The position numbers and the translations under genes are program-made. The notes beneath the pieces were generated by a model. It was given only the letters and a program-made list of their open reading frames with translations, made no database searches and was not told the origin of the DNA. 22,215 nt of DNA from Macrostomum lignano (taxonomy: Eukaryota). The stretch spans positions 1 to 22,215 of the forward strand of contig NIVC01003445.1 in NCBI GenBank assembly GCA_002269645.1, written 5' to 3'. Shown in pieces: positions 1 to 22,215 of the stretch. Positions within the stretch are counted from its first letter, which is position 1; every line of letters begins with the position of its first letter.

Positions 1-1502
1 TCTCCCCCACCCCACTCTCCCCACTCCACCTCTCCCACTTCACTCTCCCCACTCCACTCTCCCCACTCCACTCTCCCCCACCCCACTCTCCCCACTCCAC
101 TCTCCCCCACTTCACTCTCCCCACTCCACTCTCCCCACTCCACTCTCCCCCACCCCACTCTCCCCACTCCACTCTCCCACTTCACTCTCCCACTCCACTC
201 TCCCCACTTCACTCTCCCCACTTCACTCTCCCCACTCCACTCTCTCCCCACTCCACTCTCCCCACTCCACTCTCCCCACTCCACCTCTCCCCACTCCACT
301 CTCCCCACTCCACTCTCCCCACTCCACTCTCCCCACTCCACTCTCCCCACTCCACTCTCCCCCCCACTTCACTCTCCCCACTCCACTCTCCCCACTCCAC
401 TCTCCCCCACCCCACTCTCCCCACTCCACTCTCCCCCACTTCACTCTCCCCACTCCACTCTCCCCACTTCACTCTCCCCACTTCACTCTCCCCACTCCAC
501 TCTCCCCACTTCACTCTCCCCACTCCACTCTCCCACTCCACTCTCCCCACTCCACTCTCCCCACTCCACTCTCCCCACTCCACTCTCCCCACTCCACTCT
601 CCCCACTCCACTCTCCCCACTCCACTCTCCCCACTCCACTCTCCCCACTCCACTCTCCCACTCCACTCTCCCCACTCCACTCTCCCCACTCCACTCTCCC
701 CACTCCACTCTCCCCACTCCACTCTCCCCACTCCACTCTCCCCACTCCACTCTCCCCACTCCACTCTCCCACTCCACTCTCCCCCACTCCACTCTCCCCC
801 ACTCCACTCTCCCCACTCCACTCTCCCCACTCCACTCTCCCCACTCCACTCTCCCCACTTCACTCTCCCCACTTCACTCTCCCCACTCCACTCTCCCACT
901 TCACTCTCCCCTCCACTCTCCCCACTCCACTCTCCCCACTCCACTCTCCCCACTCCACTCTCCCCACTCCACTCTCCCCACTCCACTCTCCCCACTCCAC
1001 TCTCCCCACTCCACTCTCCCCACTCCACTCTCCCCACTCCACTCTCCCCACTCCACTCTCCCCACTCCACTCTCCCCACTCCACTCTCCCCACTCCACTC
1101 TCCCCCACTCCACTCTCCCCACTCCACTCTCCCCACTCCACTCTCCCCACTCCACTCTCCCCACTCCACTCTCCCACTCCACTCTCCCCACTCCACTCTC
1201 CCCACTCCACTCTCCCCCACTCCACTCTTCTCCTCCACTCCACTCTCCCTACTTTTCTCTCCGCCTCTACTCTTCCCACGCCACTCTCCCCACTCCACTC
1301 TCCCCACTCCACTCTCCTCACTCCTCTCTCCCCACTCCACTCTCCTCACTCCACTCTCCCCACTCCACTCTCCCCACTCCACTCTCCCCACTCCACTCTC
1401 CCCACTCCACTCTCCCCACTCCTCTCTCCCCACTCCACTCTCCTCACTCCACTCTCCTCACTCCTCTCTCCCCACTCCACTCTCCTCACTCCTCTCTCCA
1501 CT
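1..1502. repeat. Intronic 14-bp tandem array (CTCCACTCTCCCCA)n, about 105 copies, truncated by the window edge
   Basis: Read directly. The plus strand is almost G-free. The 14-aa periodicity GRVEWGEWSGESGV in the track ORFs equals 3x14 nt. Confidence 0.97.
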
Positions 1503-1651
1503 CCCCTCTCCGTCACAATTCACGCCTCTTTTCCCCCACTCCTATCTCTATCGAAGCTGCCTTTTCTATGCTCTTCTCTCTCCCTCCGTCAGTCGTCCAT
1601 TGCCAGTAATCTCTGCCTCCTCCCGAACAGAACAGTGAGGGCGGCAATTCA

Positions 1652-1975
<324 letters not shown>

Positions 1976-2013
1976 CTAAAATAGGAAATCATACCGGCAT
2001 GGAAACTGCCTAC

Positions 2014-2114
2014 CTTGATGTTGCGCGGCTTATTTAGCCGAAAGTGCGGCAACCGGTGCATTCGGCTCGGCGAGTTGAAGTCAGATGGCCGAAGTATTTG
2101 GCGTACAGCAGGCG
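2014..2114 (-). CDS. PHTF: PHTF-like exon 8 containing a 1-nt frameshift (RLLYAKYFGHLTSTRRA / RMHRLPHFRLNKPRNIK)
   Basis: ttttcctcag| ... aag|gtaggc, 101 nt where 102 is needed. The two halves lie in different track ORFs (2034-2363 and 1954-2256). Together they match PHTF [34 protein letters not shown]. Confidence 0.85.
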
Positions 2115-2172
2115 CTGAGGAAAATTTGGGGGTGGGAGCGGCCGGTTCGAGTTGGAGGGTTGGCAGTGTATA

Positions 2173-3758
<1,586 letters not shown>

Positions 3759-3764
3759 TTATTT

Positions 3765-3825
3765 GGGTAAACGGCGCGAGTAACTATAACTATAGGCATA
3801 GCAGTGTGCCTCGCCATCTAATTAG
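3765..3825 (+). other. Degenerate fragment of LSU (28S-type) rRNA, helix 69-71 region, inside a 107-nt intron
   Basis: GGGTAAACGGCGCGAGTAACTATAACTATAGGCA--TAGCAGTGTGCCTCGCCATCTAATTAG versus the conserved 28S GGGTAAACGGCGGGAGTAACTATGACTCTCTTAAGGTAGCCAAATGCCTCGTCATCTAATTAG: about 49 of 63 positions identical by hand against a remembered consensus. Not a functional rRNA gene. Confidence 0.8.
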
Positions 3826-3847
3826 GCACACCAAGCCAGTTACGAAC

Positions 3848-4024
3848 CTTTTGGTTCTGCCGCAGCCAGACCGATAGTGACTCTTCATCTTCTTCGGCCC
3901 TGTCGGAGCCGTCAAAACCGCCGGTCAGTTCGTCGAAGCCGATGGCGCTGCAAATGTCGCTGTCAGCAGAGGCGTCCGAATTTATGTCCGAGGGCAGCCG
4001 CTCAAAGTCTGAGAGTTGGCTCTC
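3848..4024 (-). CDS. PHTF: PHTF-like exon 6 (ESQLSDFERL..EEDEESLSVWLRQNQK)
   Basis: tttctttttgccgcag| ... aag|gttcgt, 177 nt, phase 0-0, in track ORF 3818-4033. Acidic linker; the phases join the neighbouring exons in frame. Confidence 0.8.
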
Positions 4025-4193
4025 CTGCGGCAAAAAGAAAACGCTTTTATTGCCTTTTTAAAACCCAATTAAGTACGCATACAGGTGCCCTCTTGCCTAA
4101 TTAATGCCCCACGTACCACCCAGTCCTCATCCCCAGTCCCAGGTGCACTCTTAACAGGTAAAAATTACAGATCCCTACAGTCCTTTCCTAGTA

Positions 4194-4300
4194 AATATCC
4201 CAGACCCCACGAAAATACTCCAAATCCCACCCAGTAAACATCCCAGATCCCACCCAGTAAACATCCCAGATCCCACCCAGTAAATATCCCAGATCCCAGC
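4194..4300. repeat. Short 23-bp tandem repeat (ATCCCACCCAGTAAACATCCCAG), about 4.5 copies
   Basis: Unit starts at 4224, 4247, 4270 and 4293. Lies just inside the intron next to the 4311 donor. Confidence 0.9.
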
Positions 4301-4310
4301 CAGCCCTCAC

Positions 4311-5104
4311 CCAGGTGTCCTCATCGGACACGTCGGCCCTGCCCGCATTGCTGGACAAGTCGGTGACACCGTGGCACCAGCAAAGTCGCTCCGCATGGTT
4401 GTTGTCGCAACTGCTGGCTCCTTCGACCCCGCCGCCAATCGAGGGTCCGAATTCCATCGACAGGCCACCGCCGCCGCCGCCGCCGCTGCCGATGCCGACA
4501 ACGCCGACGCTGCACCGGATGGAGTCCGGCTCGCTGCTGCAGTGCGGCTCATCGATGACCAGCGGAACCTGCGAATCCAGCGGCAGCGACTGCAGCGACG
4601 GCGTCGGCGTGGGCGAGAAAGTCTGGCCGAGGGGGTCGGGCAGGCTGAAAGCAGCGGCATAGGGACTCGAACTTCGGGACGCGCTGAGCTGGCTGTCGTG
4701 TCCGTTGGGGCTGCCCGATGTTGGCGGCGGCGGAGAGGCAGCGGCGGCAGCAGAGGCGGCGGCGGTGTTGGTGGCGGCGATGTAGGACTGCAGCAGGCCG
4801 AGCGCCAAGAACAGGCAGCAGGGCCAGGCGCAGTCGGACAGGATAGCCAGGCTCACAGGCGACCAGCTGGTACGGCTCTCCTCACTGATATTACTGCTCA
4901 AGTAGCTGCCGTGACAGTCGAGGATGCCCAGCACCAGGTAGCCCAGCAGCAGCCAGTACAACAGGTGGATGGCCGCGGCCACCGAGGCGCTGGTGTGGCA
5001 GCGCCACCAGGTGAGGCTCAGCGGCAGCAGCAGGGTGCGGAACAGGCCGCTGAGCAGGATGCTGGGCGGCCGCTGCTGCGGCTTTGCCTTCTCGAATGAC
5101 CAGC
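4311..5104 (-). CDS. PHTF: PHTF-like exon 5 ([29 protein letters not shown].., hydrophobic segments, then low-complexity loop ..DEDTW)
   Basis: tctccccacccag|gc tgg ... acc tgg|gtgagg, 794 nt (2 nt + 264 codons), within track ORF 4188-5180. The start aligns with PHTF GSAFAKAKPE..RVVFFPFFFRWWLQVTS. Two hydrophobic stretches are followed by Ala/Pro/Ser/Gly runs. Confidence 0.9.
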
Positions 5105-5184
5105 CTGGGTGGGGAGAGCAGCAGGAGAAACGGGGCGCTTGAGTCCCTGTAGTGATTTTGTTGCTAGGGCTACCCAGCACTCTT

Positions 5185-5292
5185 GCTTCCCTCCCTCAGT
5201 CTATTTTTCACCTCTTACTCTCCCTCCTCGTCTTTCTCTTTCTTCCCCCTCTTCCTCCCTCTTCTCCCTCTTTTTGCTTCTTTTCTCCTCTT
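5185..5292. repeat. Low-complexity polypyrimidine (CT-rich) tract in intron 5105-5479
   Basis: Nearly continuous C/T on the plus strand, so purine-rich in the pre-mRNA. Confidence 0.8.
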
Positions 5293-5479
5293 CACGATAG
5301 AAATACGCAATTTCCTAACAAAACACAAACATATTATCAAAATAATAACATTCCAAACTTATCAGATGAATGCAGAAGATAAAAGAATGAACATTAAACA
5401 AAATATATATTAACAACTGGCCGTAGCAGCTGCTTAGCTAACGGTCCCAAACAACTAACACTAGAATTTCAACCCTCAC

Positions 5480-5552
5480 CGATCACCAAATCAACATCGA
5501 CAAGGTGATAATTGGGCCGTTTGCCGCTCTTTACGTGTCGGCCTTCCAGATT
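5480..5552 (-). CDS. PHTF: PHTF-like exon 4 (NLEGRHVKSGKRPNYHLVDVDLVI-G)
   Basis: tacattag| ... atc g|gtgagg, 73 nt, phase 0-1. HLVDVDLVIG matches the PHTF signature DLIDVDLVRG. Confidence 0.9.
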
Positions 5553-5691
5553 CTAATGTATTCGAAATTTGATTTAATTAGCGTAACAATGACAATGGTA
5601 ATATGCTGGGTTTCTGGGATCTTTCATACGACTTGAAAAGCAGCCAAAACTGAAGTTGCAGCCAGCCTAAGTAACTCGGATTTGCACTTAC

Positions 5692-5748
5692 CGATAAGAT
5701 CAGCTGCTCGGTACTCTGCTCCCAGCTCTTCTGATCGTATCGGCTGAG
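5692..5748 (-). CDS. PHTF: PHTF-like exon 3 (LSRYDQKSWEQSTEQLILS)
   Basis: tttcacctgcag| ... tcg|gtaagt, 57 nt, phase 0-0. Matches the PHTF motif IGAYDQQIWEKSVEQREIK. Confidence 0.88.
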
Positions 5749-5820
5749 CTGCAGGTGAAAATTGAATATACAATTATTTTATGCAAAGTGTCTATTTGCA
5801 ATGCAATCTTCCAGTTGCAA

Positions 5821-8800
5821 ACACCCACACTACCAAGGCATCCACACTGCCAGACACCCACACTACCAAGGCATCCACACTGCCAGACAACCACACTACC
5901 AAGGCATGCACACTACCAAGGCACTAACACTACCAGACACCCACACTACCAGACACCCACACTACCAAGGCATCCACACTGCCAGACACCCACACTACCA
6001 AGGCATGCACACTACCAAGGCACTAACACTACCAGACACCCACACTACCAAGGCATCCACACTGCCAGACACCAACACTACCAAGGCATGCACACTACCA
6101 AGGCACTAACACTACCAGACACCCACACTACCAGACACCCACACTACCAAGGCATCCACACTGCCAGACACCCACACTACCAAGGCATGCACACTACCAA
6201 GGCACTAACACTACCAGACACCCACAATACCAGACACCCACACTACCAGACACCCACACTACCAGACACCCACACTACCAAGGCACTAACACTACCAGAC
6301 ACCCACAATACCAGACACCCACACTACCAGACACCAACACTACCAGACACCCACACTTCCAGACACCCACACTACCAGACACCCACATTACCAGACACCC
6401 ACACTACAAGACACCCACACTACCAGACACCAACACTACCAGACACCTACACTGCCAGACACCAACACTGCCAGACACCAACACTACCAGACACCCACAC
6501 TACCAGACACCCACACTGCCAGACACCAACACTACCAGACACCCACACTGCCAGACACCCACACTACCAGACACCCACACTGCCAGACACCCACACTACC
6601 AGACACCCACACTGCCAGACACCCACACTACCAGACACCCATACTGCCAGACACCCACACTAACAGACACCCACACTACCAGACACCCACACTGCCAGAC
6701 ACCAACACTACCAGACACCAACACTACCAGACACCCACACTACCAGACACCCACACTGCCAGACACCAACACTACCAGACACCCACACTGCCAGACACCC
6801 ACACTATCAGACACCCACACTACCAGACACCAACACTACCAGACACCCATACTGCCAGACACCCACACTACCAGACACCCATACTGCCAGACACCCACAC
6901 TAACAGACACCCACACTGCCAGACACCCACACTGCCAGACACCAACACTACCAGACACCAACACTGCCAGACACCGACACTGCCAGACACCAACACTACC
7001 AGACACCGACACTGCCAGACACCAACACTACCAGACACCAACACTACCAGACACCCACACTACCAGACACCAACACTACCAGTCACCAACACTACCAGAC
7101 ACCAACACTACCAGACACCAACACTACCAGACACCCATACTGCCAGACACCCACACTACCAGACACCCACACTGCCAGACACCAACACTACCAGACACCC
7201 ACACTGCCAGACACCAACACTACCAGACACCAACACTACCAGACACCCACACTGCCAGACACCAACACTACCAGACACCAACACTACCAGACACCCACAC
7301 TGCCAGACACCAACACTACCAGACACCCACACTGCCAGACACCCACACTACCAGACACCCACACTGCCAGACACCCACACTACCAGACACCCACACTGCC
7401 AGACACCCACACTACCAGACACCCATACTGCCAGACACCCACACTAACAGACACCCACACTACCAGACACCCACACTGCCAGACACCAACACTACCAGAC
7501 ACCAACACTACCAGACACCAACACTACCAGACACCCACACTACCAGACACCCACACTACCAGACACCCACACTGCCAGACACCCACACTACCAGACACCC
7601 ACACTACCAGACACCCACACTGCCAGACACCCACACTACCAGACACCCACACTGCCAGACACCCACACTACCAGACACCCACACTGCCAGACACCAACAC
7701 TACCAGACACCCACACTGCCAGACACCCACACTACCAGACACCCACACTACCAGACACCCACACTGCCAGACACCACACTACCAGACACCAACACTACCA
7801 GACACCCTCACTACCAGACACCAACACTACCAGACACCCACACTGCCAGACACCAACACTACCAGACACCAACACTACCAGACACCAACACTGCCAGACA
7901 CACACACTACCAGACACCCACACTACCAGACACCCACACTGCCAGACACCAACACTACCAGACACCAACACTACCAGACACCGACACTGCCAGACACCCA
8001 TACTGCCAGACACTAACACTACCAGACACCCACACTGCTAGACACCCACACTACCAGACACCCATACTGCCAGACACCAACACTACCAGACACCCACACT
8101 ACCAGACACCCACACTGCCAGACACCCACACTACCAGACACCCACACTGCCAGAAAGCCACACTACCAGACAGCCACACTACCAGACACCAACACTACCA
8201 GACACCCTCACTACCAGACACCAACACTACCAGACACCCACACTGCCAGACACCAACACTACCAGACACCCACACTACCAGACACCCATACTGCCAGACA
8301 CCCACACTACCAGAAACTCACACTACCAGACACCAACACTACCAGACACCCACACTACCAGACACCCACACTGCCAGACACCCACACTACCAGACACCCA
8401 CACTGCCAGACACCCACACTACCAGACACCCACACTGCCAGACAGCCACACTACCAGACACCCATACTGCCAGACACCAACACTACCAGACACCCACACT
8501 ACCAGACACCAACACTACCAGACACCCACACTACCAGACACCCACACTACCAGACACCCACACTACCAGACACCCATACTGCCAGACACCAACACTACCA
8601 AAAACTTACACTACCAGACACCCACACTACCAGACACCAACACTACCAGACACCAACACTACCAGACACCCACACTGCCAGACAGCCACACTACCAGACA
8701 CCCATACTGCCAGACACCAACACTACCAGACACCAACACTACCAGACACCCACACTACCAGACACCCACACTGCCAGACACCAACACTACCAGACACCCA

Positions 8801-11800
8801 CACTGCCAGACACCCACACTATCAGACACCCACACTACCAGACACCAACACTACCAGACACCCATACTGCCAGACACCCACACTACCAGACACCCATACT
8901 GCCAGACACCCACACTAACAGACACCCACACTGCCAGACACCAACACTACCAGACACCAACACTGCCAGACAGCCACACTACCAGACACCCATACTGCCA
9001 GACACCCACACTACCAGACACCCATACTGCCAGACACCCACACTACCAGACACCAACACTACCAGACACCCATACTGCCAGACACCCACACTACCAGACA
9101 CCCACACTGCCAGACAGCCACACTACCAGACACCCATACTGCCAGAAACCCACACTACCAGACACCCACACTGCCAGACACCAACACTACCAGACACCAA
9201 CACTACCAGACACCCACACTACCAGACACCCACACTGCCAGACACCAACACTACCAGACACCCACACTGCCAGACACCCACACTATCAGACACCCACACT
9301 ACCAGACACCAACACTACCAGACACCCATACTGCCAGACACCCACACTACCAGACACCCATACTGCCAGACACCCACACTAACAGACACCCACACTGCCA
9401 GACACCAACACTACCAGACACCAACACTACCAGACACCCATACTGCCAGACACCCACACTACCAGACACCCATACTGCCAGACACCCACACTAACAGACA
9501 CCCACACTGCCAGACACCCACACTACCAGTCACCAACACTACCAGACACCCACACTACCAGACACCCACACTGCCAGACACCAACACTACCAGACACCCA
9601 CACTGCCAGACACCCACACTATCAGACACCCACACTACCAGACACCAACACTACCAGACACCCATACTGCCAGACACCCACACTACCAGACACCCATACT
9701 GCCAGACACCCACACTACCAGACACCAACACTACCAGACACCAACACTACCAGACACCAACACTACCAGACACCCACACTGCCAGACAGCCACACTACCA
9801 GACACCCATACTGCCAGACAATCACACTACCAGACACCCACACTGCCAGACACCAACACTACCAGACACCAACACTACCAGACACCCTCACTACCAGACA
9901 CCAACACTACCAGACACCCACACTGCCAGACACCCACACTACCAGACACCAACACTACCAGACACCCTCACTACCAGACACCAACACTACCAGACACCCA
10001 CACTGCCAGACACCCACACTACCAGACACCCACACTGCCAGACACCAACACTACCAGACACCAACACTACCAGAAACTCACACTACCAGACACCAACACT
10101 ACCAGACACCAACACTACCAGACACCAACACTACCAGACACCCACACTACCAGACACCCATACTGCCAGACACCAACACTACCAGACACCAACACTACCA
10201 GACACCCATACTGCCAGACACTAACACTACCAGACACCCACACTGCTAGACACCCACACTGCCAGACACCAACACTACCAGACACCCACACTGCCAGACA
10301 CCAACACTACCAGACACTAACACTGCCAGACACCCACACTACCAGACACCCACACTACCAGACACCCACACTGCCAGACACCAACACTACCAGACACCCA
10401 CACTGCCAGACACCAACACTACCAGACACCAACACTACCAGACACCCATACTGCCAGACACCCACACTACCAGACACCCACACTGCCAGACACCAACACT
10501 ACCAGACACCCACACTGCCAGACACCAACACTGCCAGACACCAACACTACCAGACACCCACACTGCCAGACACCAACACTACCAGACACCAACACTACCA
10601 GACACCCACACTGCCAGACACCAACACTACCAGACACCCACACTGCCAGACACCCACACTACCAGACACCCACACTGCCAGACACCCACACTACCAGACA
10701 CCCACACTGCCAGACACCCACACTACCAGACACCCATACTGCCAGACACCCACACTAACAGACACCCACACTACCAGACACCCACACTGCCAGACACCAA
10801 CACTACCAGACACCAACACTACCAGACACCAACACTACCAGACACCAACACTACCAGACACCCACACTACCAGACACCCACACTACCAGACACCCACACT
10901 GCCAGACACCCACACTACCAGACACCCACACTACCAGACACCCACACTGCCAGACACCCACACTACCAGACACCCACACTGCCAGACACCCACACTACCA
11001 GACACCCACACTGCCAGACACCAACACTACCAGACACCCACACTGCCAGACACCCACACTACCAGACACCCACACTACCAGACACCCACACTGCCAGACA
11101 CCCACACTACCAGACACCAACAATACCAGAAACCCTCACTACCAGACACCAACACTACCAGACACCCACACTGCCAGACACCAACACTACCAGACACCAC
11201 ACTACCAGACACCAACACTGCCAGACACACACACTACCAGACACCCACACTACCAGACACCCACACTGCCAGACACCAACACTACCAGACACCAACACTA
11301 CCAGACACCGACACTGCCAGACACCCACACTGCCAGACACCCACACTACCAGACACCCACACTGCAGACACCCACACTACCAGACACCCATACTGCCAGA
11401 CACCAACACTACCAGACACCCACACTACCAGACACCCACACTGCCAGACACCCACACTACCAGACACCCACACTGCCAGAAAGCCACACTACCAGACAGC
11501 CACACTACCAGACACCAACACTACCAGACACCCTCACTACCAGACACCAACACTACCAGACACCCACACTGCCAGACACCAACACTACCAGACACCCACA
11601 CTACCAGACACCCATACTGCCAGACACCCACACTACCAGAAACTCACACTACCAGACACCAACACTACCAGACACCCACACTACCAGACACCCACACTGC
11701 CAGACACCCACACTACCAGACACCCACACTGCCAGACACCCACACTACCAGACACCCACACTGCCAGACAGCCACACTACCAGACACCCATACTGCCAGA

Positions 11801-14800
11801 CACCAACACTACCAGACACCCACACTACCAGACACCAACACTACCAGACACCCACACTACCAGACACCCACACTACCAGACACCCACACTACCAGACACC
11901 CATACTGCCAGACACCAACACTACCAAAAACTTACACTACCAGACACCAACACTACCAGACACCAACACTACCAGACACCAACACTACCAGACACCCACA
12001 CTGCCAGACACCCACACTACCAGACACCCATACTGCCAGACACCAACACTACCAGACACCAACACTACCAGACACCCACACTACCAGACACCCACACTGC
12101 CAGACACCAACACTACCAGACACCCACACTGCCAGACACCCACACTATCAGACACCCACACTACCAGACACCAACACTACCAGACACCCATACTGCCAGA
12201 CACCCACACTACCAGACACCCATACTGCCAGACACCCACACTAACAGACACCCACACTGCCAGACACCAACACTACCAGACACCACACTGCCAGACAGCC
12301 ACACTACCAGACACCCATACTGCCAGACACCCACACTACCAGACACCCATACTGCCAGACACCCACACTACCAGACACCAGCACTACCAGACACCCATAC
12401 TGCCAGACACCCACACTACCAGACACCCACACTGCCAGACAGCCACACTACCAGACACCCATACTGCCAGAAACCCACACTACCAGACACCCACACTGCC
12501 AGACACCAACACTACCAGACACCAACACTACCAGACACCCACACTACCAGACACCCACACTGCCAGACACCAACACTACCAGACACCCACACTGCCAGAC
12601 ACCCACACTATCAGACACCCACACTACCAGACACCAACACTACCAGACACCCATACTGCCAGACACCCACACTACCAGACACCCATACTGCCAGACACCC
12701 ACACTAACAGACACCCACACTGCCAGACACCAACACTACCAGACACCAACACTACCAGACACCCATACTGCCAGACACCCACACTACCAGACACCCATAC
12801 TGCCAGACACCCACACTAACAGACACCCACACTGCCAGACACCCACACTACCAGTCACCAACACTACCAGACACCCACACTACCAGACACCCACACTGCC
12901 AGACACCAACACTACCAGACACCCACACTGCCAGACACCCACACTATCAGACACCCACACTACCAGACACCAACACTACCAGACACCCATACTGCCAGAC
13001 ACCCACACTACCAGACACCCATACTGCCAGACACCCACACTAACAGACACCCACACTGCCAGACACCAACACTACCAGACACCAACACTACCAGACAACC
13101 ACACTGCCAGACAGCCACACTACCAGACACCCATACTGCCAGACAATCACACTACCAGACACCCACACTGCCAGACACCAACACTACCAGACACCAACAC
13201 TACCAGACACCCTCACTACCAGACACCAACACTACCAGACACCCACACTGCCAGACACCCACACTACCAGACACCAACACTACCAGACACCCTCACTACC
13301 AGACACCAACACTACCAGACACCCACACTGCCAGACACCCACACTACCAGACACCCACACTGCCAGACACCAACACTACCAGACACCAACACTACCAGAA
13401 ACTCACACTACCAGACACCAACACTACCAGACACCAACACTACCAGACACCAACACTACCAGACACCCACACTACCAGACACCCATACTGCCAGACACCA
13501 ACACTACCAGACACCAACACTACCAGACACCCATACTGCCAGACACCAACACTACCAGACACCCACACTGCTAGACACCCACACTGCCAGACACCAACAC
13601 TACCAGACACCCACACTGCCAGACACCAACACTACCAGACACTAACACTGCCAGACACCCACACTACCAGACACCCACACTACCAGACACCCACACTGCC
13701 AGACACCAACACTACCAGACACCCACACTGCCAGACAGCCACACTACCAGACACCCATACTGCCAGACACCCACACTACCAGACACCCATACTGCCAGAC
13801 ACCCACACTACCAGACACCAGCACTACCAGACACCCATACTGCCAGACACCCACACTACCAGACACCCACACTGCCAGACAGCCACACTACCAGACACCC
13901 ATACTGCCAGAAACCCACACTACCAGACACCCACACTGCCAGACACCAACACTACCAGACACCAACACTACCAGACACCCACACTACCAGACACCCACAC
14001 TGCCAGACACCAACACTACCAGACACCCACACTGCCAGACACCCACACTATCAGACACCCACACTACCAGACACCAACACTACCAGACACCCATACTGCC
14101 AGACACCCACACTACCAGACACCCATACTGCCAGACACCCACACTAACAGACACCCACACTGCCAGACACCAACACTACCAGACACCAACACTACCAGAC
14201 ACCCACACTGCCAGACACCCACACTGCCAGACACCAACACTACCAGACACCCACACTGCCAGACACCAACACTACCAGACACCCACACTACCAGACACCC
14301 ACACTGCCAGACACCAACACTACCAGACACCCACACTGCCAGACACTCATACTGCCAGACACCCACACTACCAGAAACTCACACTACCAGACACCAACAC
14401 TACCAGACACCCACACTACCAGACACCCACACTGCCAGACACCCACACTACCAGACACCCACACTGCCAGACACCCACACTACCAGACACCCACACTGCC
14501 AGACAGCCACACTACCAGACACCCATACTGCCAGACACCCACACTACCAGACACCCACACTGCCAGACACCAACACTACCAGACACCAACACTACCAGAC
14601 ACCCTCACTACCAGACACCAACACTACCAGACACCCACACTGCCAGACACCCACACTACCAGACACCAACACTACCAGACACCCTCACTACCAGACACCA
14701 ACACTACCAGACACCCACACTGCCAGACACCAACACTACCAGACACCCACACTACCAGACACCCATACTGCCAGACACCCACACTACCAGAAACTCACAC

Positions 14801-16444
14801 TACCAGACACCAACACTACCAGACACCCACACTACCAGACACCCACACTGCCAGACACCCACACTACCAGACACCCACACTGCCAGACACCCACACTACC
14901 AGACACCCACACTGCCAGACAGCCACACTACCAGACACCCATACTGCCAGACACCAACACTACCAGACACCAACACTACCAGACACCAACACTACCAGAC
15001 ACCCACACTACCAGACACCCACACTACCAGACACCCATACTGCCATACACCAACACTACCAAAAACTTACACTACCAGACACCAACACTACCAGACACCA
15101 ACACTACCAGACACCAACACTACCAGACACCCACACTGCCAGACACCCACACTACCAGACACCCATACTGCCAGACACCAACACTACCAGACACCAACAC
15201 TACCAGACACCCATACTGCCAGACACCAACACTACCAGACACCCACACTGCTAGACACCCACACTGCCAGACACCAACACTACCAGACACCCACACTGCC
15301 AGACACCAACACTACCAGACACCAACACTGCCAGACACCCACACTACCAGACACCCACACTGCCAGACACCAACACTACCAGACACCCACACTGCCAGAC
15401 AGCCACACTACCAGACACCCATACTGCCAGACACCCACACTACCAGACACCCATACTGCCAGACACCCACACTACCAGACACCAGCACTACCAGACACCC
15501 ATACTGCCAGACACCCACACTACCAGACACCCACACTGCCAGACAGTCACACTACCAGACACCCATACTGCCAGAAACCCACACTACCAGACACCCACAC
15601 TGCCAGACACCAACACTACCAGACACCAACACTACCAGACACCCACACTACCAGACACCCACACTGCCAGACACCAACACTACCAGACACCCACACTGCC
15701 AGACACCCACACTATCAGACACCCACACTACCAGACACCAACACTACCAGACACCCATACTGCCAGACACCCACACTACCAGACACCCATACTGCCAGAC
15801 ACCCACACTAACAGACACCCACACTGCCAGACACCAACACTACCAGACACCAACACTACCAGACACCCACACTGCCAGACACCGACACTGCCAGACACCA
15901 ACACTACCAGACACCCACACTGCCAGACACCAACACTACCAGACACCAACACTACCAGACACCAACACTACCAGTCACCAACACTACCAGACACCCACAC
16001 TGCCAGACACTCATACTGCCAGACACCCACACTACCAGACACCCACACTGCCAGACAGCCACACTACCAGACACCCATACTGCCAGACACCCACACTACC
16101 AGACACCCACACTGCCAGACACCAACACTACCAGACACCAACACTACCAGACACCCTCACTACCAGACACCAACACTACCAGACACCCACACTGCCAGAC
16201 ACCCACACTACCAGACACCAACACTACCAGACACCCTCACTACCAGACACCAACACACCAGACACCACACTGCCAGACACCAACACTACCAGACACCCAC
16301 ACTACCAGACACCCATACTGCCAGACACCCACACAACCAGGCACCCACACAACCAGACACCCACACTACCAGACACCCACACTACCAGACACCCACACTA
16401 CCAGACTCCCACACTACCAGGCACCCACACTACCAGGCACCCAC
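5821..16444. repeat. Intronic 16-bp satellite (CCCACACTACCAGACA / CCAACACTACCAGACA / CCCACACTGCCAGACA variants), about 660 units, with kb-scale internal duplications
   Basis: Read directly. Occupies nearly all of the 10,696-nt intron 5749-16444. Rare variant units recur at fixed offsets. Confidence 0.98.
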
Positions 16445-16537
16445 CTTGCTCCTATACCAGTCCAGCCAGGTGTTGAGGCTCCACCAAGGCCCCACCGGCT
16501 GGACGCTGGCAGACGCGCCGCTGTCCTTGTCGCCCGG
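16445..16537 (-). CDS. PHTF: PHTF-like exon 2 (PGDKDSGASASVQPVGPWWSLNTWLDWYRSK)
   Basis: Acceptor attcttttacag| and donor aag|gtgggt, 93 nt, phase 0-0. The end ..LDWYRSK resembles the PHTF N-terminal ..IVWYQKK motif. Confidence 0.8.
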
Positions 16538-16900
16538 CTGTAAAAGAATTGTTGAATTGAAAACAGCTGATGTCGAATGTGCAAAAAAATAAATTAATAA
16601 TCATAAATATTGCTCTTCAACCCTAGCAAAACCATTTTTGAAATTGAGAAACGCTTAGCAACAAAAACCTTGACTTTGTATTAGCCCTTGGTATATATTT
16701 GTGAAATATACACAAAACTGTGTACAATCAAGGATTACATCCTTAGTAAACAGCAGAGATTAGAGATAGTGACTGCTGGTTTGTACGCTCGTACAAAACA
16801 GCGGCCATGCATACAAGTGCATTAAAATTTTAATAATGCTACTAATAAATAGTAGATTATACCATTATCTTAGCGCATAGCAGGCAACAAAAAACTTTAC

Positions 16901-16960
16901 TTCATACGCAATCAATTTTTCGCTTGGCGAATTCAAACCAAACTCAGGATGTTTTTTCAT
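16901..16960 (-). CDS. PHTF: PHTF-like gene, candidate first coding exon (MKKHPEFGLNSPSEKLIAYE)
   Basis: Minus strand reads gattgtctttttag|c ATG aaa...tat gaa|gtaaag: 20 codons, phase-0 donor matching the phase-0 acceptor at 16537. The next exon has no in-frame ATG, so an upstream start is needed. No homology support for this peptide itself. Confidence 0.5.
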
Positions 16961-16961
16961 G

Positions 16962-16975
16962 CTAAAAAGACAATC
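16962..16975 (-). promoter_or_regulatory. Splice acceptor 1 nt upstream of the candidate PHTF ATG (possible trans-splice site)
   Basis: Minus strand gattgtctttttag|cATG. Confidence 0.45.
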
Positions 16976-17194
16976 GAATTGCACTACTTACAAAGAAATG
17001 AGTAGTATAATTGAAAAATTAACTTAATTAATTAAAATTCGCATTAAAAAGCGCGTTAAAATGTCTAAAAAACATTTTGAAACCGTGCACATTTAAACTC
17101 CAAAAACTAGAAGCGTCTCAGGCCCAGTGGAATTTCAGGCCCAGTGGATTTGATAAAAAAATGTTTTTCAAATCGTCAAAATTTTCAGCTCCAA

Positions 17195-17200
17195 TTTATT
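17195..17200 (-). promoter_or_regulatory. Candidate polyadenylation signal AATAAA overlapping the gene A stop codon
   Basis: Minus strand reads gaa taa att, giving G-AATAAA-TT; U-rich sequence follows. Confidence 0.4.
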
Positions 17201-17240
17201 CCTTTTTCTTCAAGTACAGCTGCACGAAGTCTTTTTTCAG
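17196..17240 (-). CDS. Gene A, candidate terminal exon (LKKDFVQLYLKKKE*)
   Basis: Strong acceptor atcttttattacag|, phase 0, after a 129-nt intron. 14 codons plus TAA; the stop overlaps AATAAA. Confidence 0.55.
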   Translation of the reverse strand: MKKDFVQLYLKKKE

Positions 17241-17369
17241 CTGTAATAAAAGATTTTGGGTATTCAGAACGAGTTACGATCGTACATCAAGGATTTAAAC
17301 TTAATAATTTATTGTCAGCATTAAAAAAACAACGCCGATATCTAGAGAAGAAAATAATCAGAAACTCAC

Positions 17370-17487
17370 CTTAAAATAGCTCTCAGCTGGTGTCCAGGGA
17401 TCGCTGATGTCATCTGTGTTCAGTTGGATTAGAAACTTCTGCTGCATGCCGCCAGACTTGCGAATCAGAGCATAGCCAAAGCAGGGC
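17370..17487 (-). CDS. Gene A, internal exon (PCFGYALIRKSGGMQQKFLIQLNTDDISDPWTPAESYFK)
   Basis: aacccgcag|g ccc ... aag|gtgagt, 118 nt, phase 2-0, within track ORF 17358-17642. The donor is a perfect consensus. Confidence 0.72.
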
Positions 17488-17500
17488 CTGCGGGTTCGCA

Positions 17501-18582
17501 TTTGGGATTCCGGTCTGGGATTTTGGGATTCTGGCCTGGGATTTTGGGATTCCGGTCTGGGATTTTGGGATTCTGGCCTATGATTTTGGGATTCCGGTCT
17601 GGGATTTTGGGATTCTGGTCTGAAATTTTGGGATTCTGTCATGGGATATTAGGATTCTGTCATGGGATATTGGGATTCTGGTTTAGGATACTGGGATTCT
17701 AGTTTAGGATATTAGTAGGATTTTGGTTAAGGATATTGGGATTCTGGTTTAGGATATTGAGATTCTAGTGTAGGATATTGAGATTCTGGTGTAGGATATT
17801 GGGATTATGGTTTAGGATATTGGGATTATGGTTTAGGATATTGAGATTCTGGTGTAGGATATTGAGATTCTGGTGTAGGATATTGGGATTATGGTTTAGG
17901 ATATTGGGATTATGGTGTAGGATATTGGGATTATGGTTTTGATATTGAGATTCTGGTTTAGGATATTGGGATTATGGTTTAGGATATTGGGATTCTGGTT
18001 TAGTATATTGAGATTCTGGTGTAGGATATTGGGATTATGGTTTAGGATATTGGGATTATGGTGTACGATATTGAGATTCTGGTGTAGGATATTGGGATTA
18101 TGGTTTAGGATATTGAGATTCTGGTGTAGGATATTGGGATTATGGTTTAGGATATTGGGATTATGGTTTAGGATATTGAGATTCTGGTTTAGGATATTGG
18201 GATTCTGGTTTAGGATATTGGGATTATGGTTTAGGATATTAGGATTCTGGTTTAGGATATTGGGATTCTGGTTTAGGATATTAGGATTCTGGTTTAGGAT
18301 ATTGGGATTCTGGTTAAGGATATTGGGATTCTGGTTTAGGATATTGGGATTCTGGTTTAGTATATTGAAATTCTGGTGTAGGATATTGGGATTATGGTTT
18401 AGGATATTGGGATTCTGGTTTAGGATATTGAGATTCTGGTTTAGGATATTGGGATTATGGTTTAGGATATTAGGATTCTGGTTTAGGATATTGGGATTAT
18501 GGTTTAGGATATTGGGATTCTGGTTTAGGATATTGAGATTCTGGTGTAGGATATTGGGATTCTGGTTTAGGATATTGGGATT
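17501..18582. repeat. Intronic 21-bp minisatellite (GGGATTCTGGTTTAGGATATT)n, about 51 copies
   Basis: Read directly. The 7-aa periodicity (FRILGFW) in the track ORFs equals 21 nt. Lies in gene A intron 17488-18691. Confidence 0.97.
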
Positions 18583-18691
18583 AAGTTAAGGGCTCTAAAT
18601 ATCTACAAGGCTTCTCCAAAAAAGCACAGTTGCAATCGAACTCAAAGCAGATATCATCGAATTAAGAACACCCGAGAAAAAGCGAGCTCAC

Positions 18692-18836
18692 CCCTCGCCA
18701 GTCAAGTCGATGCAGACCTCATTCCCAGTTGGCTTGCTGGGATGCCGGTCGCTGACGATTCGATCCCTACTGGACAGTCCGGGCGTGATCGCCTTCACTA
18801 TGATGAAGCCGGGGTGCTTGGCCAGCTCCAAAACAC
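18692..18836 (-). CDS. Gene A (unrecognised product), internal exon (VLELAKHPGFIIVKAITPG..EVCIDLTGE-G)
   Basis: tctttgtcacacag|gt ... gag gg|gtgagc, 145 nt, phase 1-2, open frame. A GC-rich island between AT-rich DNA and a repeat array. Its phase-2 end fits the next exon. Confidence 0.7.
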
Positions 18837-21767
18837 CTGTGTGACAAAGATGGCAGGATATATCAGTAATGTCTGGCTAACAACAAATTCTCATTTACTT
18901 GCTTAATGACCAGGTGAGTAATAAACATCGACAGGATTTAAACATAATTGGTAGGAAATAAGTAATTGCAATAGCAAATTTAATGATTTGTTGATAAGTT
19001 GATAACTTTGTTGATAAGATGATAAGATGATTTGTCAATTATTTAACATAATTGAACCAAATGTTACACATTTCCATAGTATGATCGTACCATTGCAATT
19101 TTAATATATGGAAGCCTTAGGCAGTTGCAGTTTTAATACTGTATATACCAAGACCATTATGAAATGCATTACTAAGATAGCAATGATATTAGGAGGTCCT
19201 AACATTATTCTACATAATATGTATACATGTACATGTAGTGAACAAATGGTTTAGCATAGATTCATTAGGGTCCCTAAGGATTATGCCACAATAACATAAA
19301 TGGCAAACTACAAAAGTTCTAATGATAATAAAATAGACTAATATCTTAGATTGTTTTAAGTTCTTGAATTAAATAAACTTCATAGCTTGTTGCTCTTAAC
19401 AATGTTTTTAAGTCTGCATTTCATAATCCCTATTCACCTATTGCGCTATTTTTTTTGCCACTATACAATAGATGTCCTAGAAGTAGTATCGAGTAGGAAC
19501 TAGGAAGCTAAATTTATTCAATGAAATTTCTTACTTTAGCATGTAGCTACTTCCTGCTTTAGACAGCATGAATTTGCTTGCATACCACTGAGAATATACA
19601 TATACAAAATATAAATAATAGTTCTATGCTTACACAGAAGAAAGACATAATGGGGCTGTATAAAATGGAATTAGAAAGCAGCCACAGCAGCAGCAATAGC
19701 GTAATTTGTTTCAGACACTGAGGTTAATATTTACTAAGTAAAACAGACAATTTTTGTACTCTGAAGCTTTGGCAACTCTGGCACTCTTGCAATTGCTATT
19801 GGGTAGATTATGTCTATAAGAATTGGACTATATACTACATATATGCTGTGTGTATATCAGTATATACACTTAGGCATCAGACTCAATCATAATTCTATGC
19901 CAATGAAATTAATATGCTTTGATAATGCTAGTAGAAGTATAGGGTGCTTGCAGATTATGATAAGTTTGCTGAATTGCATAAAAAAATTAAAGGATTATCT
20001 AAGTAAGAGTAAAAAATATTATAAATAAATGCTTACATTGCTTAAATATATCAATTACTTTTGAGTCACCTTGCACATTGTAGGTCTAATACACAACTTG
20101 TTATAACTTTTGTTTCATTTTTTTGTCAAAACTCTAATATCAAAATGTTAGATAGATTATGCTACTTATTATTTTGTGCTTTGCTAATAAAGTGTTCTAT
20201 TATAATCAGCTTTATATATAAGTGGTACTACTTTTAGGATATCCTTTTTAAATATTTATTAGAATTAAATGGTAATTATACTATAGCACAAAAATACATT
20301 TTCACAAAAGCCCTCATATATCTGATATAAAAATTATATATTTAATATGTGCCAAATGATATTTGGTGCTTTGAAATGTGTTAATCAAAGTCATTGCCAA
20401 TCAATGGTAATTTTATTTCAATGATGTATAGAAAAACAAATATATAGTATTTAATTTTTAGGTTCTAAAATTAGTAGCTTCAAAAAATGTTGGACCAAAA
20501 TAATACCAATAGTATCAACTTTTGTGAACTAAATGATTTTGTATCTAAAATATTTCCAAAAATTACTTTAGTTAATATATTATACAATAAGACTAGATAT
20601 ATTATACTTACATATCAAAAAATAATATATCTCATTTTAATATATCCCAAAAATGTATGCTAATTTATCTTTCAGTACTTCTATACACATAGATTTAGAA
20701 AATTCTAGTACTGGCAGATAGGTAACAGGTAAGCATAGTTTATATTGTCTACCTTGGCTCTATAGACTATAGTAAATTAATGAATGCTACCAACCTAAGA
20801 AATTTTTTGGTATAGATAGGTTTATATTGATTTATTTATTGTTATTTGCATGCAAGAAAAGAGTATTTATTTTTATTTGGCATATGCTTTGACATAATAT
20901 ACTTTTAAAAAATAATATGCCCCTTTTTAGTACATCTGTTTATTATATTGATTATTAATAACAAAAACATGTACAAGTACTAGTTCTAATAAGACTAAGA
21001 GTCTATAAAATCTTAATCTTAAGCACCTAAACAAAAACAAAAACTATATTTTTTGTGATAAAAGCCTAAGTAAAAATTAAACACAGATCATAGCTGAAGA
21101 AAAACATACTGATTTGACAAACTCTTTCTTCCATTGCAGTCTTCAACTTAGTGGCTTATACGTGTGGCTTTCATGTATTAATAAAATAATAGCTGATACT
21201 GAAATTAATTAGGTCTATTTTGCATTCATTGACATAGGATATACCAGAAATTCAAGAATTGCAAAAAGAAGCAATGATTTTTCGTATCAAAGTATTATAC
21301 TGCCTGTAAATAAAAATCAAGGGACTTAAATAGTAATATAATATAGCATTTGCTACCGCTCTAATAGAATGTAAAGTGCACACTACTAAGTACTAATTAT
21401 ACTTAGGAGATTTAATCTAAGATGTACTTAGTACTCATACCCACAGTATCTGAACAGGTGCGTTCTAAGGAAGATACAATTCAAAATTGCTATCAATCTA
21501 ATACCAAACACAGTATAACTAAAACCGAGACATTAACTATACTTAGCGATACAAAAAAGCAAATACAACATTCCATTTATTTTTTTGTTTCAGACATATG
21601 ATTCTTTTTCTTTTAAAAATGCTTTAGGTACAATGCATTAACAAGGAAATCAAATAAGAAATTTACGCAGCTGAATTAACCGACTGTATTTTTTTTGCGA
21701 CAATAACTCTAGCACAGAGCTCTAGATTTTGAAGCCCTTTAGGTGTGTCCCATACGATTACATGTAC

Positions 21768-21834
21768 CTCGTATCAGTCGTTTACTTTGAGAGTCCATCT
21801 CGTAGAGCTTTGAGATTGACTTTGCTTTAAACAT
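21768..21834 (-). CDS. Gene A, speculative first coding exon (MFKAKSISKLYEMDSQSKRLIR-)
   Basis: ATG-initiated open frame ending cga g|gtacat (phase 1, as the 18836 exon requires). An acceptor-like ttttttcttttcaaag lies about 63 nt upstream. No homology support, and it sits in AT-rich DNA where chance fits are easy. Confidence 0.25.
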
Positions 21835-22215
21835 ATGCTCATAAATCTGATAGCCTTAACGAATATATTTTATGATGAGCAAGCAAGGATAATAAACCTT
21901 TGAAAAGAAAAAAACAACTCTTCTACTCATATTAGCTTGAATTCCAGGAGTGCAACGATATTTGATATTAACAGAAAGCAAATATTTTTTCTAGTGCCTT
22001 AAATTTGTAGCTTTAATATTGTCAATTTATTGATTAAAAAATCTGATGCACCATAGGTGCAGTAAAAAATTAACTGAAAGGTATAATTTCATAGTGCATG
22101 CTTGACAAAAAAAGAAATAAAAAATCAAATGCGAATACTAAACCGATTTGTCCCGACACGACAAGCGATAACGAGCAAAACAAACGCAATAAAAGTAATT
22201 GGAAAAATGAAATAA

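What the first reader, a model, noticed from the sequence alone, without database searches (positions are those of the whole stretch)
16901..17240. Operon-like junction: gene A stop to PHTF ATG in 235 nt, with a splice acceptor directly before the ATG
Seen: on the minus strand a candidate terminal exon ends TAA at 17196 with AATAAA on the stop. A 235-nt AT/U-rich spacer follows, then gattgtctttttag|cATG at 16960, opening a 20-codon exon that splices in phase to PHTF exon 2. There is little room for a promoter. Known: this layout (poly(A) signal, short U-rich intercistronic region, unpaired acceptor before the ATG) characterises spliced-leader operons in nematodes, flatworms and tunicates. Inference: gene A and PHTF are co-transcribed and resolved by SL trans-splicing. 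Alternative seen in the sequence: a GTAAGT donor at 16991 could pair with this acceptor as a 30-nt cis mini-intron.
Basis: partly seen in the sequence, partly recalled or inferred. Interest (0 to 1): 0.75.

Follow-up and report, generated by a model that had tools for sequence, protein, structure and literature searches.

The report
Flatworm operon junction, leader-donated start codon
This is an ordinary spliced-leader/operon-type gene junction in the flatworm Macrostomum lignano.

Summary
The window is GenBank contig NIVC01003445.1 of Macrostomum lignano (assembly Mlig_3_7). This flatworm has published spliced-leader (SL) trans-splicing and operons.

- In a near-identical copy of the locus (NIVC01001405.1), the deposited annotation starts the 709-aa PHTF coding sequence at the first base after the acceptor TTTTACAG.
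- This is the only acceptor between the upstream stop and that exon that fits the published trans-splice motif YTNCAG.
- The exon has no ATG, there is a genomic in-frame stop 22 codons upstream, and the next in-frame Met is 291 codons downstream.
- The M. lignano SL ends in ATG. Joined at 16537 it reads ATG|CCG GGC..., in frame, giving MPGDKDSG....

The best model is therefore SL trans-splicing 658 nt after the upstream stop, with the SL supplying the initiator AUG. The distance meets the published <1 kb operon criterion. Co-transcription is inferred, not shown. This is a known phenomenon of low interest.

The parts
21768..21846 (-). Upstream gene ('gene A'), earliest exon seen in the window (IYEHMFKAKSISKLYEMDSQSKRLIR). 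Acceptor ctatcag, donor gtacat.
   Evidence: tblastn of the ML2 model P0008; exact coordinates and frame; sequence.
18692..18836 (-). Gene A exon (VLELAKHPGF...DLTGEG).
   Evidence: 100% match to deposited protein P0005/PAA51194.1 and to P0004/P0008.
17370..17487 (-). Gene A penultimate exon (PCFGYALIRK...AESYFK), donor gtgagt at 17369. The ML2 models use an alternative internal acceptor, with the exon starting at 17403.
17196..17240 (-). Gene A terminal exon (LKKDFVQLYLKKKE*), with stop TAA at 17198-17196.
   Evidence: It forms the C-terminus of deposited protein P0005 and of ML2 model P0008.
17195..17200 (-). AATAAA overlapping the stop codon. It is the only canonical poly(A) signal between the stop and the PHTF exon.
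16538..17195 (-). 658-nt AT-rich interval between the upstream stop and the PHTF acceptor (T 39%, GC 32%). It is inferred to be a short 3'UTR plus an intercistronic region/outron.
   Evidence: Composition. Limits.
16901..16960 (-). It is present as sequence but absent from both available gene models, so it is probably not an exon.
   Evidence: sequence; models skip it; chance tests.
16538..16545 (-). Acceptor TTTTACAG. It matches the published M. lignano trans-splice acceptor motif [T/C]TNCAG and is the inferred SL trans-splice site.
   Evidence: the only motif match in 17195-16440. Motif from PMC8629364. The annotated CDS starts at the next base in the paralogous copy.
16445..16537 (-). First genomic PHTF exon (PGDKDSGASASVQPVGPWWSLNTWLDWYRSK). 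It has no ATG. The SL's terminal ATG reads in frame into it. Donor GTGGGT at 16444.
   Evidence: The Pfam PF12129 match begins inside this exon.
5821..16444 (-). PHTF first intron, almost wholly a 10.6-kb minisatellite with a 16-bp unit. The array begins at the exon's donor.
5692..5748 (-). PHTF exon (LSRYDQKSWEQSTEQLILS).
5480..5552 (-). PHTF exon (NLEGRHVKSGKRPNYHLVDVDLVI).
4311..5104 (-). Large PHTF exon with the membrane-spanning part of the PHTF N-domain. It contains the first in-frame Met of the ORF (MEFGPS, residue 292 of the SL-AUG model).

Best explanation
The locus is a same-strand gene pair in Macrostomum lignano. The upstream gene is annotated as BOX15_Mlig005596g1; older models join it to a Pur-alpha gene that lies beyond the window. 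It ends at TAA 17196, with AATAAA on the stop.

The PHTF mRNA is made by spliced-leader trans-splicing at the acceptor TTTTACAG (AG at 16539-16538), 658 nt downstream of that stop. The first genomic PHTF exon (16537-16445) has no start codon. The 3'-terminal AUG of the 35-nt SL (...TTGCATG) is joined directly to CCG GGC GAC... and acts as the initiator, giving MPGDKDSGASASVQPVGPWWSLNTWLDWYRSK....

The 658-nt interval is then a short 3'UTR plus an intercistronic region/outron. By the published M. lignano criterion (downstream gene trans-spliced, less than 1 kb apart) the pair counts as an operon.

Shown here:
- the species and the contig;
- the gene identities;
- the annotated CDS start at the acceptor;
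- the frame relations.

Inferred:
- SL addition at this exact site;
- use of the SL AUG as initiator;
- co-transcription with the upstream gene.
For: 1. Species and contig. The best protein hits are M. lignano. The window is identical to NIVC01003445.1 of GCA_002269645.1.

2. Published background for this species. There is one 35-nt SL, CGGTCTCTTACTGCGAAGACTCAATTTATTGCATG. About 30% of genes are trans-spliced and about 15% are in operons. The acceptor motif is [T/C]TNCAG, and the operon threshold is 1 kb with a mode near 100 bp (PMC8629364). Gene boundaries in the deposited annotation were cut at mapped SL-read peaks (PMC5730564).

3. Annotated CDS start. In the copy NIVC01001405.1 the junction region differs from the window at no more than 3 of 860 aligned positions (5 variable columns across the four copies). 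There the deposited 709-aa PHTF CDS (PF12129) starts at the first base after ttttacag, reading CCGGGCGAC = PGD. The three complete CDSs in the fetched loci (Pur-alpha, DAGAT, P0003) start at genomic ATGs; the other partial one (gene A) does not. A 5'-partial CDS that begins exactly at an exon boundary means the annotated transcript begins there.

4. Need for an external AUG. The exon has no ATG. Reading upstream in frame, the genome hits TAA after 22 codons with no ATG in between. The next in-frame Met is residue 292, beyond the conserved PHTF N-domain, which starts about 21 codons into the exon. SL-ATG plus the exon is in frame.

5. Acceptor motif. This is the only acceptor in 17195-16440 that matches YTNCAG.

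6. Independent model. The ML2 gene model P0004 splices the upstream gene's ...ESYFK donor (17369) straight to this acceptor, skipping both 17240-17196 and 16960-16901. That agrees with reports that flatworm acceptors are shared between cis- and trans-splicing (PMC12582326). If the model rests on transcripts, it also implies a continuous precursor RNA.

7. Precedent. All reported flatworm SLs end in AUG. [quoted passage not shown] 2006, as cited in PMC9851317 and PMC12582326).

8. Length check. My reconstruction of the CDS from this exon to the stop gives about 720 codons, against 709 annotated. This is consistent with a CDS that starts at this exon, but it does not by itself rule out a short extra exon.
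Against: - No read or transcript carrying the SL at this junction could be retrieved. The evidence for SL addition is the deposited annotation, not raw data.
- The PHTF annotation is on a paralogous or allelic copy. On the window's own contig PHTF is not annotated.
- The other partial model in the locus (gene A, P0005) starts 8 nt inside an exon rather than at an acceptor. Annotated partial starts are therefore not always splice sites.
- 658 nt is well above the roughly 100-nt mode for M. lignano operons, and about 60% of trans-spliced genes there are not in operons. An internal promoter is quite possible.
- I could not establish whether the ML2 fusion model rests on transcripts or on ab initio prediction.
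Confidence: 0.6

Rival explanations
1. PHTF is SL trans-spliced at 16538/16537 with the SL AUG as initiator, but it is transcribed from its own promoter inside or just upstream of the 658-nt interval. It would then be a monocistronic outron, not an operon. The neighbouring gene ends independently at its AATAAA.
For: - About 60% of trans-spliced M. lignano genes are not in operons, and operon spacers peak near 100 bp rather than 658 bp (PMC8629364).
- 658 nt of AT-rich DNA could hold a compact promoter.
- Tested M. lignano promoters are proximal (PMC5730564).
Against: - By the published criterion (under 1 kb, downstream gene trans-spliced) the pair is classed as an operon.
- The ML2 model P0004 joins an upstream-gene exon to the PHTF acceptor, which needs a continuous transcript if the model is evidence-based.
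Confidence: 0.25
2. The SL is added at the acceptor tttttag|c (16961). Translation starts at the genomic ATG 16960. The 60-nt exon 16960-16901 is cis-spliced (GTAAAG donor) to 16537.
For: - All the motifs are present and in phase.
- It is the only genomic ATG exon in the interval that has a donor starting GTAA and more than a few codons.
- The full configuration occurs in only 1.5% of dinucleotide shuffles, in a post hoc test.
- TAG acceptors are used elsewhere in this gene, for example at 5553.
Against: - The deposited PHTF CDS starts at 16537-equivalent. If this exon were in the transcript model, the ORF caller would have started at its ATG.
- The ML2 model skips the exon.
- The acceptor does not fit YTNCAG, and the donor GTAAAG does not fit GT[G/A]AG.
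- SL addition here would place the SL AUG out of frame, one base before the genomic AUG, opening a 6-codon ORF: ATG CAT GAA AAA ACA TCC TGA.
- The ORF length alone is not above chance.
Confidence: 0.08
3. There is no trans-splicing. A conventional capped transcript starts in the spacer and may remove the 30-nt GTAAGT(16991)...AG(16962) mini-intron or use the 16960 exon. Alternatively, the main product is a cis-spliced fusion of the upstream gene with PHTF, as in ML2 model P0004.
For: - GTAAGT at 16991 and the acceptor are 30 nt apart.
- P0004 is an in-frame (phase 0 to phase 0) fusion of upstream-gene exons with the PHTF exon.
Against: - The annotated PHTF transcript begins exactly at the acceptor.
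- The separate upstream gene, with its own stop and AATAAA, is deposited four times.
- A capped transcript starting in the spacer would have no in-frame AUG for the PHTF domain unless it used the 16960 exon, which the models lack.
Confidence: 0.05

Closest known systems
Macrostomum lignano SL trans-spliced genes and operons (Wudarski et al. 2017, PMC5730564; Ustyantsev & Berezikov 2021, PMC8629364)
   Same: - Same species and same assembly.
- Same-strand neighbours less than 1 kb apart.
- The downstream gene's 5' end lies at a YTNCAG acceptor.
- The upstream gene has AATAAA at its end.
- There is a single 35-nt SL ending in ATG.
   Different: - The spacer (658 nt from stop to acceptor) is much longer than the roughly 100-nt mode.
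- SL reads and the polycistronic precursor were not seen here, only the deposited models.
- This pair has not been described individually in any text I could search.
Flatworm SL 3'-terminal AUG used as initiator methionine (Cheng et al. 2006, J Biol Chem 281:733, cited in PMC9851317 and PMC12582326); 'slORFs'
   Same: - The SL ends in AUG.
- The AUG is in frame at the junction.
- The recipient exon has no AUG of its own before the conserved domain, so the SL AUG is required.
   Different: - That work was done in Schistosoma mansoni with cDNAs and translation assays.
- Here the use of the AUG is inferred from frame and conservation only. I found no M. lignano paper that addresses it.
Caenorhabditis elegans operons (SL2-type)
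   Same: The layout is the same: poly(A) signal of the upstream gene, a U-rich spacer, and an unpaired acceptor of the downstream gene resolved by SL addition.
   Different: - M. lignano has one SL with no SL1/SL2 specialisation (PMC8629364; PMC12582326).
- The spacer here is about six times the typical C. elegans length.
- No Ur-element test exists for this species.
- The C. elegans SLs do not end in an AUG that is used in this way.
PHTF1/PHTF2 family (Pfam PF12129 PHTF1-2_N)
   Same: - The N-domain matches at E=8.5e-29.
- The C-terminal half hits PHTF2 of vertebrates, a tunicate and a coral.
- The conserved W..Y..K...YD..W motif is split over the same first exons.
   Different: - The genomic gene lacks its own start codon.
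- The introns are filled with minisatellites.
- This copy carries an apparent frameshift in exon 8.

Membership tests
M. lignano operon (criteria of Ustyantsev & Berezikov 2021) | Immediately adjacent genes on the same strand, with no opposite-strand gene between them. | tested here: met
   The upstream terminal exon (17240-17196) and the PHTF exon (16537-16445) are both on the minus strand. No gene is called between them in four deposited copies.
M. lignano operon (criteria of Ustyantsev & Berezikov 2021) | Repeat-adjusted intergenic distance below 1000 bp. | tested here: met
   The distance is 658 nt from stop to acceptor. It would be less once the 3'UTR is subtracted. No tandem repeat lies in the interval.
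M. lignano operon (criteria of Ustyantsev & Berezikov 2021) | Downstream gene SL trans-spliced, that is, SL-bearing reads map to its first exon. | tested here: inconclusive
   No reads were available. The indirect evidence is that the deposited 5'-partial CDS starts exactly at the acceptor, in an annotation whose boundaries were cut at SL-read peaks.
M. lignano operon (criteria of Ustyantsev & Berezikov 2021) | Trans-splice acceptor motif [T/C]TNCAG at the junction. This is an enriched motif, not an obligatory one. | tested here: met
TTACAG at 16543-16538 is the only match in 17195-16440.
Operon in the strict sense (one promoter, polycistronic precursor) | A single pre-mRNA spans both genes, and the downstream gene has no promoter of its own. 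| not testable with these tools
   The only hint is ML2 model P0004, which joins an upstream-gene exon to the PHTF acceptor. Its evidential basis is unknown.
SL-donated initiator AUG (Cheng et al. 2006 type) | The SL ends in AUG. | tested here: met
   The published M. lignano SL ends ...TTGCATG (PMC8629364; PMC5173321).
SL-donated initiator AUG (Cheng et al. 2006 type) | The SL AUG is in frame with the conserved ORF at the junction, and no genomic AUG is available upstream of the conserved domain. | tested here: met
   ATG|CCG GGC... gives MPGDKDSG.... There is a genomic in-frame TAA 22 codons upstream with no ATG between. The next in-frame Met is at residue 292. The Pfam domain starts about 21 codons in.
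SL-donated initiator AUG (Cheng et al. 2006 type) | Translation actually starts at the SL AUG. | not testable with these tools
   This needs ribosome profiling, an N-terminal peptide or a reporter assay.
C. elegans-type SL2 operon | A specialised second SL for downstream genes and a spacer of about 100 nt with a Ur element. | tested here: not met
   The literature reports a single SL in M. lignano. The spacer here is 658 nt. Ur-element function was not testable.
PHTF1/2 protein family | PHTF1-2_N domain (PF12129) above the gathering score, and homology of the C-terminal membrane region. | tested here: met
   100.7 bits against a cutoff of 25. PHTF2 hits from birds, mouse, frog, Phallusia and Orbicella at E 1e-14 to 1e-18.

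The most novel reading that the evidence does not exclude
The acceptor at 16538 is used in two ways. SL trans-splicing gives free-standing PHTF, which depends wholly on the SL AUG. Cis-splicing from the phase-compatible donor of the upstream gene (17369) gives an in-frame fusion of the upstream (Pur-alpha-linked) protein with PHTF, as in ML2 model A0A1I8IVC8. The choice between resolving the operon and fusing the genes would then be regulated and biologically meaningful.
Probability: 0.08. Interest if true: 0.45.

Novelty: already known. Interest (0 to 1): 0.15.

Why it matters
It matters mainly as a calibration point. A tool-free reader correctly recognised an SL/operon-type junction from raw sequence, but picked the wrong acceptor because it looked for a genomic ATG.

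In flatworms the SL itself can carry the start codon. A conserved gene can therefore look 'headless' in the genome, and a plausible ATG mini-exon in the spacer can be a decoy.

For M. lignano users the practical points are these.
- PHTF, and probably other genes with 5'-partial deposited CDSs that begin at an acceptor, should be modelled with the SL AUG as initiator.
- Transgenes or knock-ins at this locus must keep the trans-splice acceptor.
- This particular contig copy of PHTF carries an apparent frameshift.

None of this changes what is known about SL trans-splicing.

Tried and rejected
1. Transcript evidence. Three word-indexed protein searches and one exhaustive HMMER search returned only genome-derived M. 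lignano models. No RNA-seq-derived (Logan) protein covered the junction, so the SL-exon join could not be seen directly. The 709-aa deposited PHTF protein is not in the searchable protein set, so I could not read its name or 'partial' flag.

2. Literature tables. No held supplement or full text mentions PHTF, Mlig005596 or Mlig010179. Wasik et al. 2015 is not held, so the basis of the ML2 models is unknown.

3. Conservation. The four assembly copies of the junction differ at only 5 of 860 positions, too few to separate exon from spacer.

4. Inference from P0003. I first took the deposited 246-aa model starting at MEFGPS as evidence for a missing genomic ATG. I rejected this because its contig (NIVC01003446.1) simply begins inside the minisatellite intron.

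5. Identity of gene A. There was no Pfam hit. The only non-Macrostomum HMMER hits are two giant bacterial proteins, one with Ig-like (POM152-type) repeats and one with DUF5122/dockerin repeats. Each matches only about 40-55 residues of the query, so I treated both as spurious.

6. Other scans. There is no SL-like sequence in the window and no Rfam family.

7. The bacterial promoter/terminator scan was not used, because it does not apply to a metazoan.

Full report
**What the window is**

The window is eukaryotic. It has GC-rich exons, AT-rich non-coding DNA and several long minisatellites. The best protein matches are all Macrostomum lignano. The reverse complement of window 7196-22215 is identical to GenBank NIVC01003445.1, a 22,215-bp contig of assembly GCA_002269645.1 (Mlig_3_7), so the window is that contig.

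M. lignano is a free-living flatworm with published SL trans-splicing.
- It has one 35-nt SL, CGGTCTCTTACTGCGAAGACTCAATTTATTGCATG.
- About 30% of genes are trans-spliced and about 15% are in operons.
- The trans-splice acceptor motif is [T/C]TNCAG.
- Operon spacers have a mode near 100 bp, and operons are defined as less than 1 kb apart (PMC8629364).
- The deposited annotation cut gene boundaries at peaks of mapped SL reads and poly(A) reads (PMC5730564).

**Checking the observation**

- The terminal exon is 17240-17196 (LKKDFVQLYLKKKE*), with TAA at 17198-17196.
- AATAAA lies at 17200-17195.
- The spacer 17195-16961 is 235 nt (T 41%, A 28%).
- The acceptor context is gattgtctttttag|c, followed by ATG at 16960.
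- The 60-nt ORF runs to 16901 and is followed by GTAAAG.
- GTAAGT lies at 16991-16986.
- The ORF is in phase with the next PHTF exon, which starts at 16537 (AG at 16539-16538), one base off my first reading.

The upstream terminal exon is real by independent evidence. The deposited protein PAA51194.1 (BOX15_Mlig005596g1, partial, 99 aa) is present on four contigs and ends with it.

PHTF is also real. Pfam PF12129 matches at E=8.5e-29, beginning inside the 16537-16445 exon. The C-terminal half hits PHTF2 of vertebrates, a tunicate and a coral.

The candidate 'exon 1' has no such support.
- An ATG ORF of its length (31 codons to the stop) or longer turns up in 63% of shuffles.
- The complete acceptor-ATG-ORF-donor configuration is rarer, at 1.5% of dinucleotide shuffles. 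I defined that test after seeing the feature.
- The T-richness of the spacer equals that of the sequence on the other side of the candidate exon.

**Where the PHTF mRNA starts**

Four near-identical copies of the junction exist in the assembly, differing at 5 of 860 positions. On one of them, NIVC01001405.1, a 709-aa PHTF CDS with PF12129 is deposited. It starts at locus position 12292, which is the first base after ...caattcttttacag. It reads CCG GGC GAC = PGD, which corresponds to window 16537.

The three complete CDSs in the fetched loci (Pur-alpha, DAGAT, P0003) start at genomic ATGs; the partial gene A model does not. A 5'-partial CDS that begins exactly at an exon boundary means that the annotated transcript begins there. 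Had the transcript model included the 16960 exon, the ORF caller would have started at that ATG. Had the model run upstream unspliced, it would have met the in-frame TAA 22 codons upstream.

Other evidence points the same way.
- The older ML2 gene model A0A1I8IVC8 (P0004) splices the upstream gene's ...ESYFK donor (17369) directly to PGDKDSG.... It uses the same acceptor and skips both 17240-17196 and 16960-16901.
- The acceptor TTACAG at 16543-16538 is the only one between the stop and the exon that fits the published trans-splice motif.

**The start codon**

The exon 16537-16445 has no ATG. The ORF has no Met until residue 292 (MEFGPS), far beyond the conserved N-domain. The SL ends in ATG. 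Joined at 16537 it reads ATG CCG GGC GAC..., in frame, giving MPGDKDSGASASVQPVGPWWSLNTWLDWYRSK. That is out of frame and overlaps the genomic ATG.

Use of the flatworm SL AUG as initiator is established. All reported flatworm SLs end in AUG. In S. mansoni the SL AUG is in frame in 28% of trans-spliced mRNAs, and more than 40 cDNAs need it (Cheng et al. 2006, as cited in PMC9851317 and PMC12582326).

My reconstruction of the CDS from this exon to the stop used the window and the overlapping contig NIVC01003446.1. It gives nine genomic exons and about 720 codons, against 709 annotated. This is consistent with a CDS that starts at this exon, but it does not by itself rule out a short extra exon.

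**Is it an operon?**

The distance from stop to acceptor is 658 nt, with one AATAAA (on the stop) and no tandem repeat. Under the published rule (downstream gene trans-spliced, less than 1 kb) the pair is an operon. If it is transcript-based, the ML2 fusion model implies a continuous precursor. It also fits the reported sharing of acceptors between cis- and trans-splicing in flatworms.

Three points weigh against this.
- 658 nt is far above the roughly 100-nt mode.
- Most trans-spliced M. lignano genes are not in operons.
- I saw no precursor reads.

My estimates are about 0.85 that the SL is added at 16537, about 0.7 that the SL AUG is also the initiator, and about 0.6 for the full statement including co-transcription.

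**The upstream gene**

Its exons in the window are 21846-21768, 18836-18692, 17487-17370 and 17240-17196. ML2 models (P0004, P0008) join them to a three-repeat Pur-alpha gene that lies beyond the window's end. The Mlig_3_7 annotation keeps Pur-alpha (272 aa) separate. The 129-aa product has no Pfam domain and no credible homologue outside Macrostomum.

**Comparison and verdict**

This is an ordinary example of two known things: M. lignano SL/operon organisation and the flatworm SL-donated AUG.

No referred steps.

Noticed in passing
window 5821-16444 (minus strand intron): The first PHTF intron is almost entirely a 10.6-kb minisatellite with a 16-bp unit (about 660 copies, 88% matches). It is G+T-rich on the transcribed strand, with GC skew about -0.68 on the plus strand. 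The array begins at the exon's donor, so the 5' splice site GTGGGT (16444) is itself the first repeat unit, and near-identical GTGGGT motifs recur hundreds of times downstream.
   Followed up: partly
window 2014-2114 (minus strand, PHTF exon 8): This 101-nt exon lies between phase-0 neighbours and changes frame internally. RLLYAKYFGHLTSTRRA is in one frame and MHRLPHFRLNKPRNIK in another. This is an apparent 1-nt deletion near GCCGAATGCAC. The sequence is identical in NIVC01003446.1, where it truncates the deposited model BOX15_Mlig010179g1 at ...CRTFG*. It is either an assembly indel or a frameshifted duplicate copy of PHTF.
   Followed up: partly
window 1-11802 vs L001 (NIVC01003446.1) 11741-1: The neighbouring accession NIVC01003446.1 (37.4 kb) overlaps the window over 11.8 kb at 98.2% identity and starts inside the 16-bp minisatellite. 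The window itself begins inside a 14-bp minisatellite (5-1511). The contig breaks and the redundancy sit at tandem arrays, and PHTF is split across contigs, so it is not annotated on the window contig.
   Followed up: partly
window 5-1511, 2173-3313, 17502-18582: Three further intronic minisatellites are present: 14-bp x107, 36/112-bp x31 and 21-bp x51. The 21-bp array ends about 15 nt before the acceptor of the upstream gene's exon at 17487 and creates long spurious ORFs (ESQNPRP repeats).
   Followed up: no
window 17369 donor to 16538 acceptor; protein P0004 (UniRef A0A1I8IVC8): An ML2 gene model fuses Pur-alpha, the upstream gene and the first PHTF exon in frame (phase 0 to phase 0), skipping the upstream gene's terminal exon. 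It is either an ab initio artefact or a read-through cis-spliced isoform that uses the trans-splice acceptor.
   Followed up: partly
window 21847-21853 / 21846: The upstream gene's earliest exon in the window also begins in phase 0 right after an acceptor (ctatcag|ATT TAT GAG CAT ATG...). An SL AUG added there would also be in frame (MIYEHMFKAK...). A genomic ATG follows four codons later.
   Followed up: no
window 18836-18829 (L003 9993-10001): The deposited partial CDS of the upstream gene (P0005) starts at GAG, 8 nt inside the exon (cacacag|GTGTTTTG|GAG), not at the acceptor or at the first complete codon. The reason is unexplained.
   Followed up: no
window 17403-17405: The ML2 models use an alternative acceptor inside the upstream gene's penultimate exon (gacatcag|C, exon from 17403). 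This removes PCFGYALIRKSGGMQQKFLIQLNTDDIS, whereas the deposited Mlig_3_7 protein keeps it.
   Followed up: no
window 17147-17135 and 17130-17118 (minus strand): A 13-nt direct repeat, CCACTGGGCCTGA, occurs twice, 17 nt apart, in the spacer about 50 nt downstream of the AATAAA.
   Followed up: no
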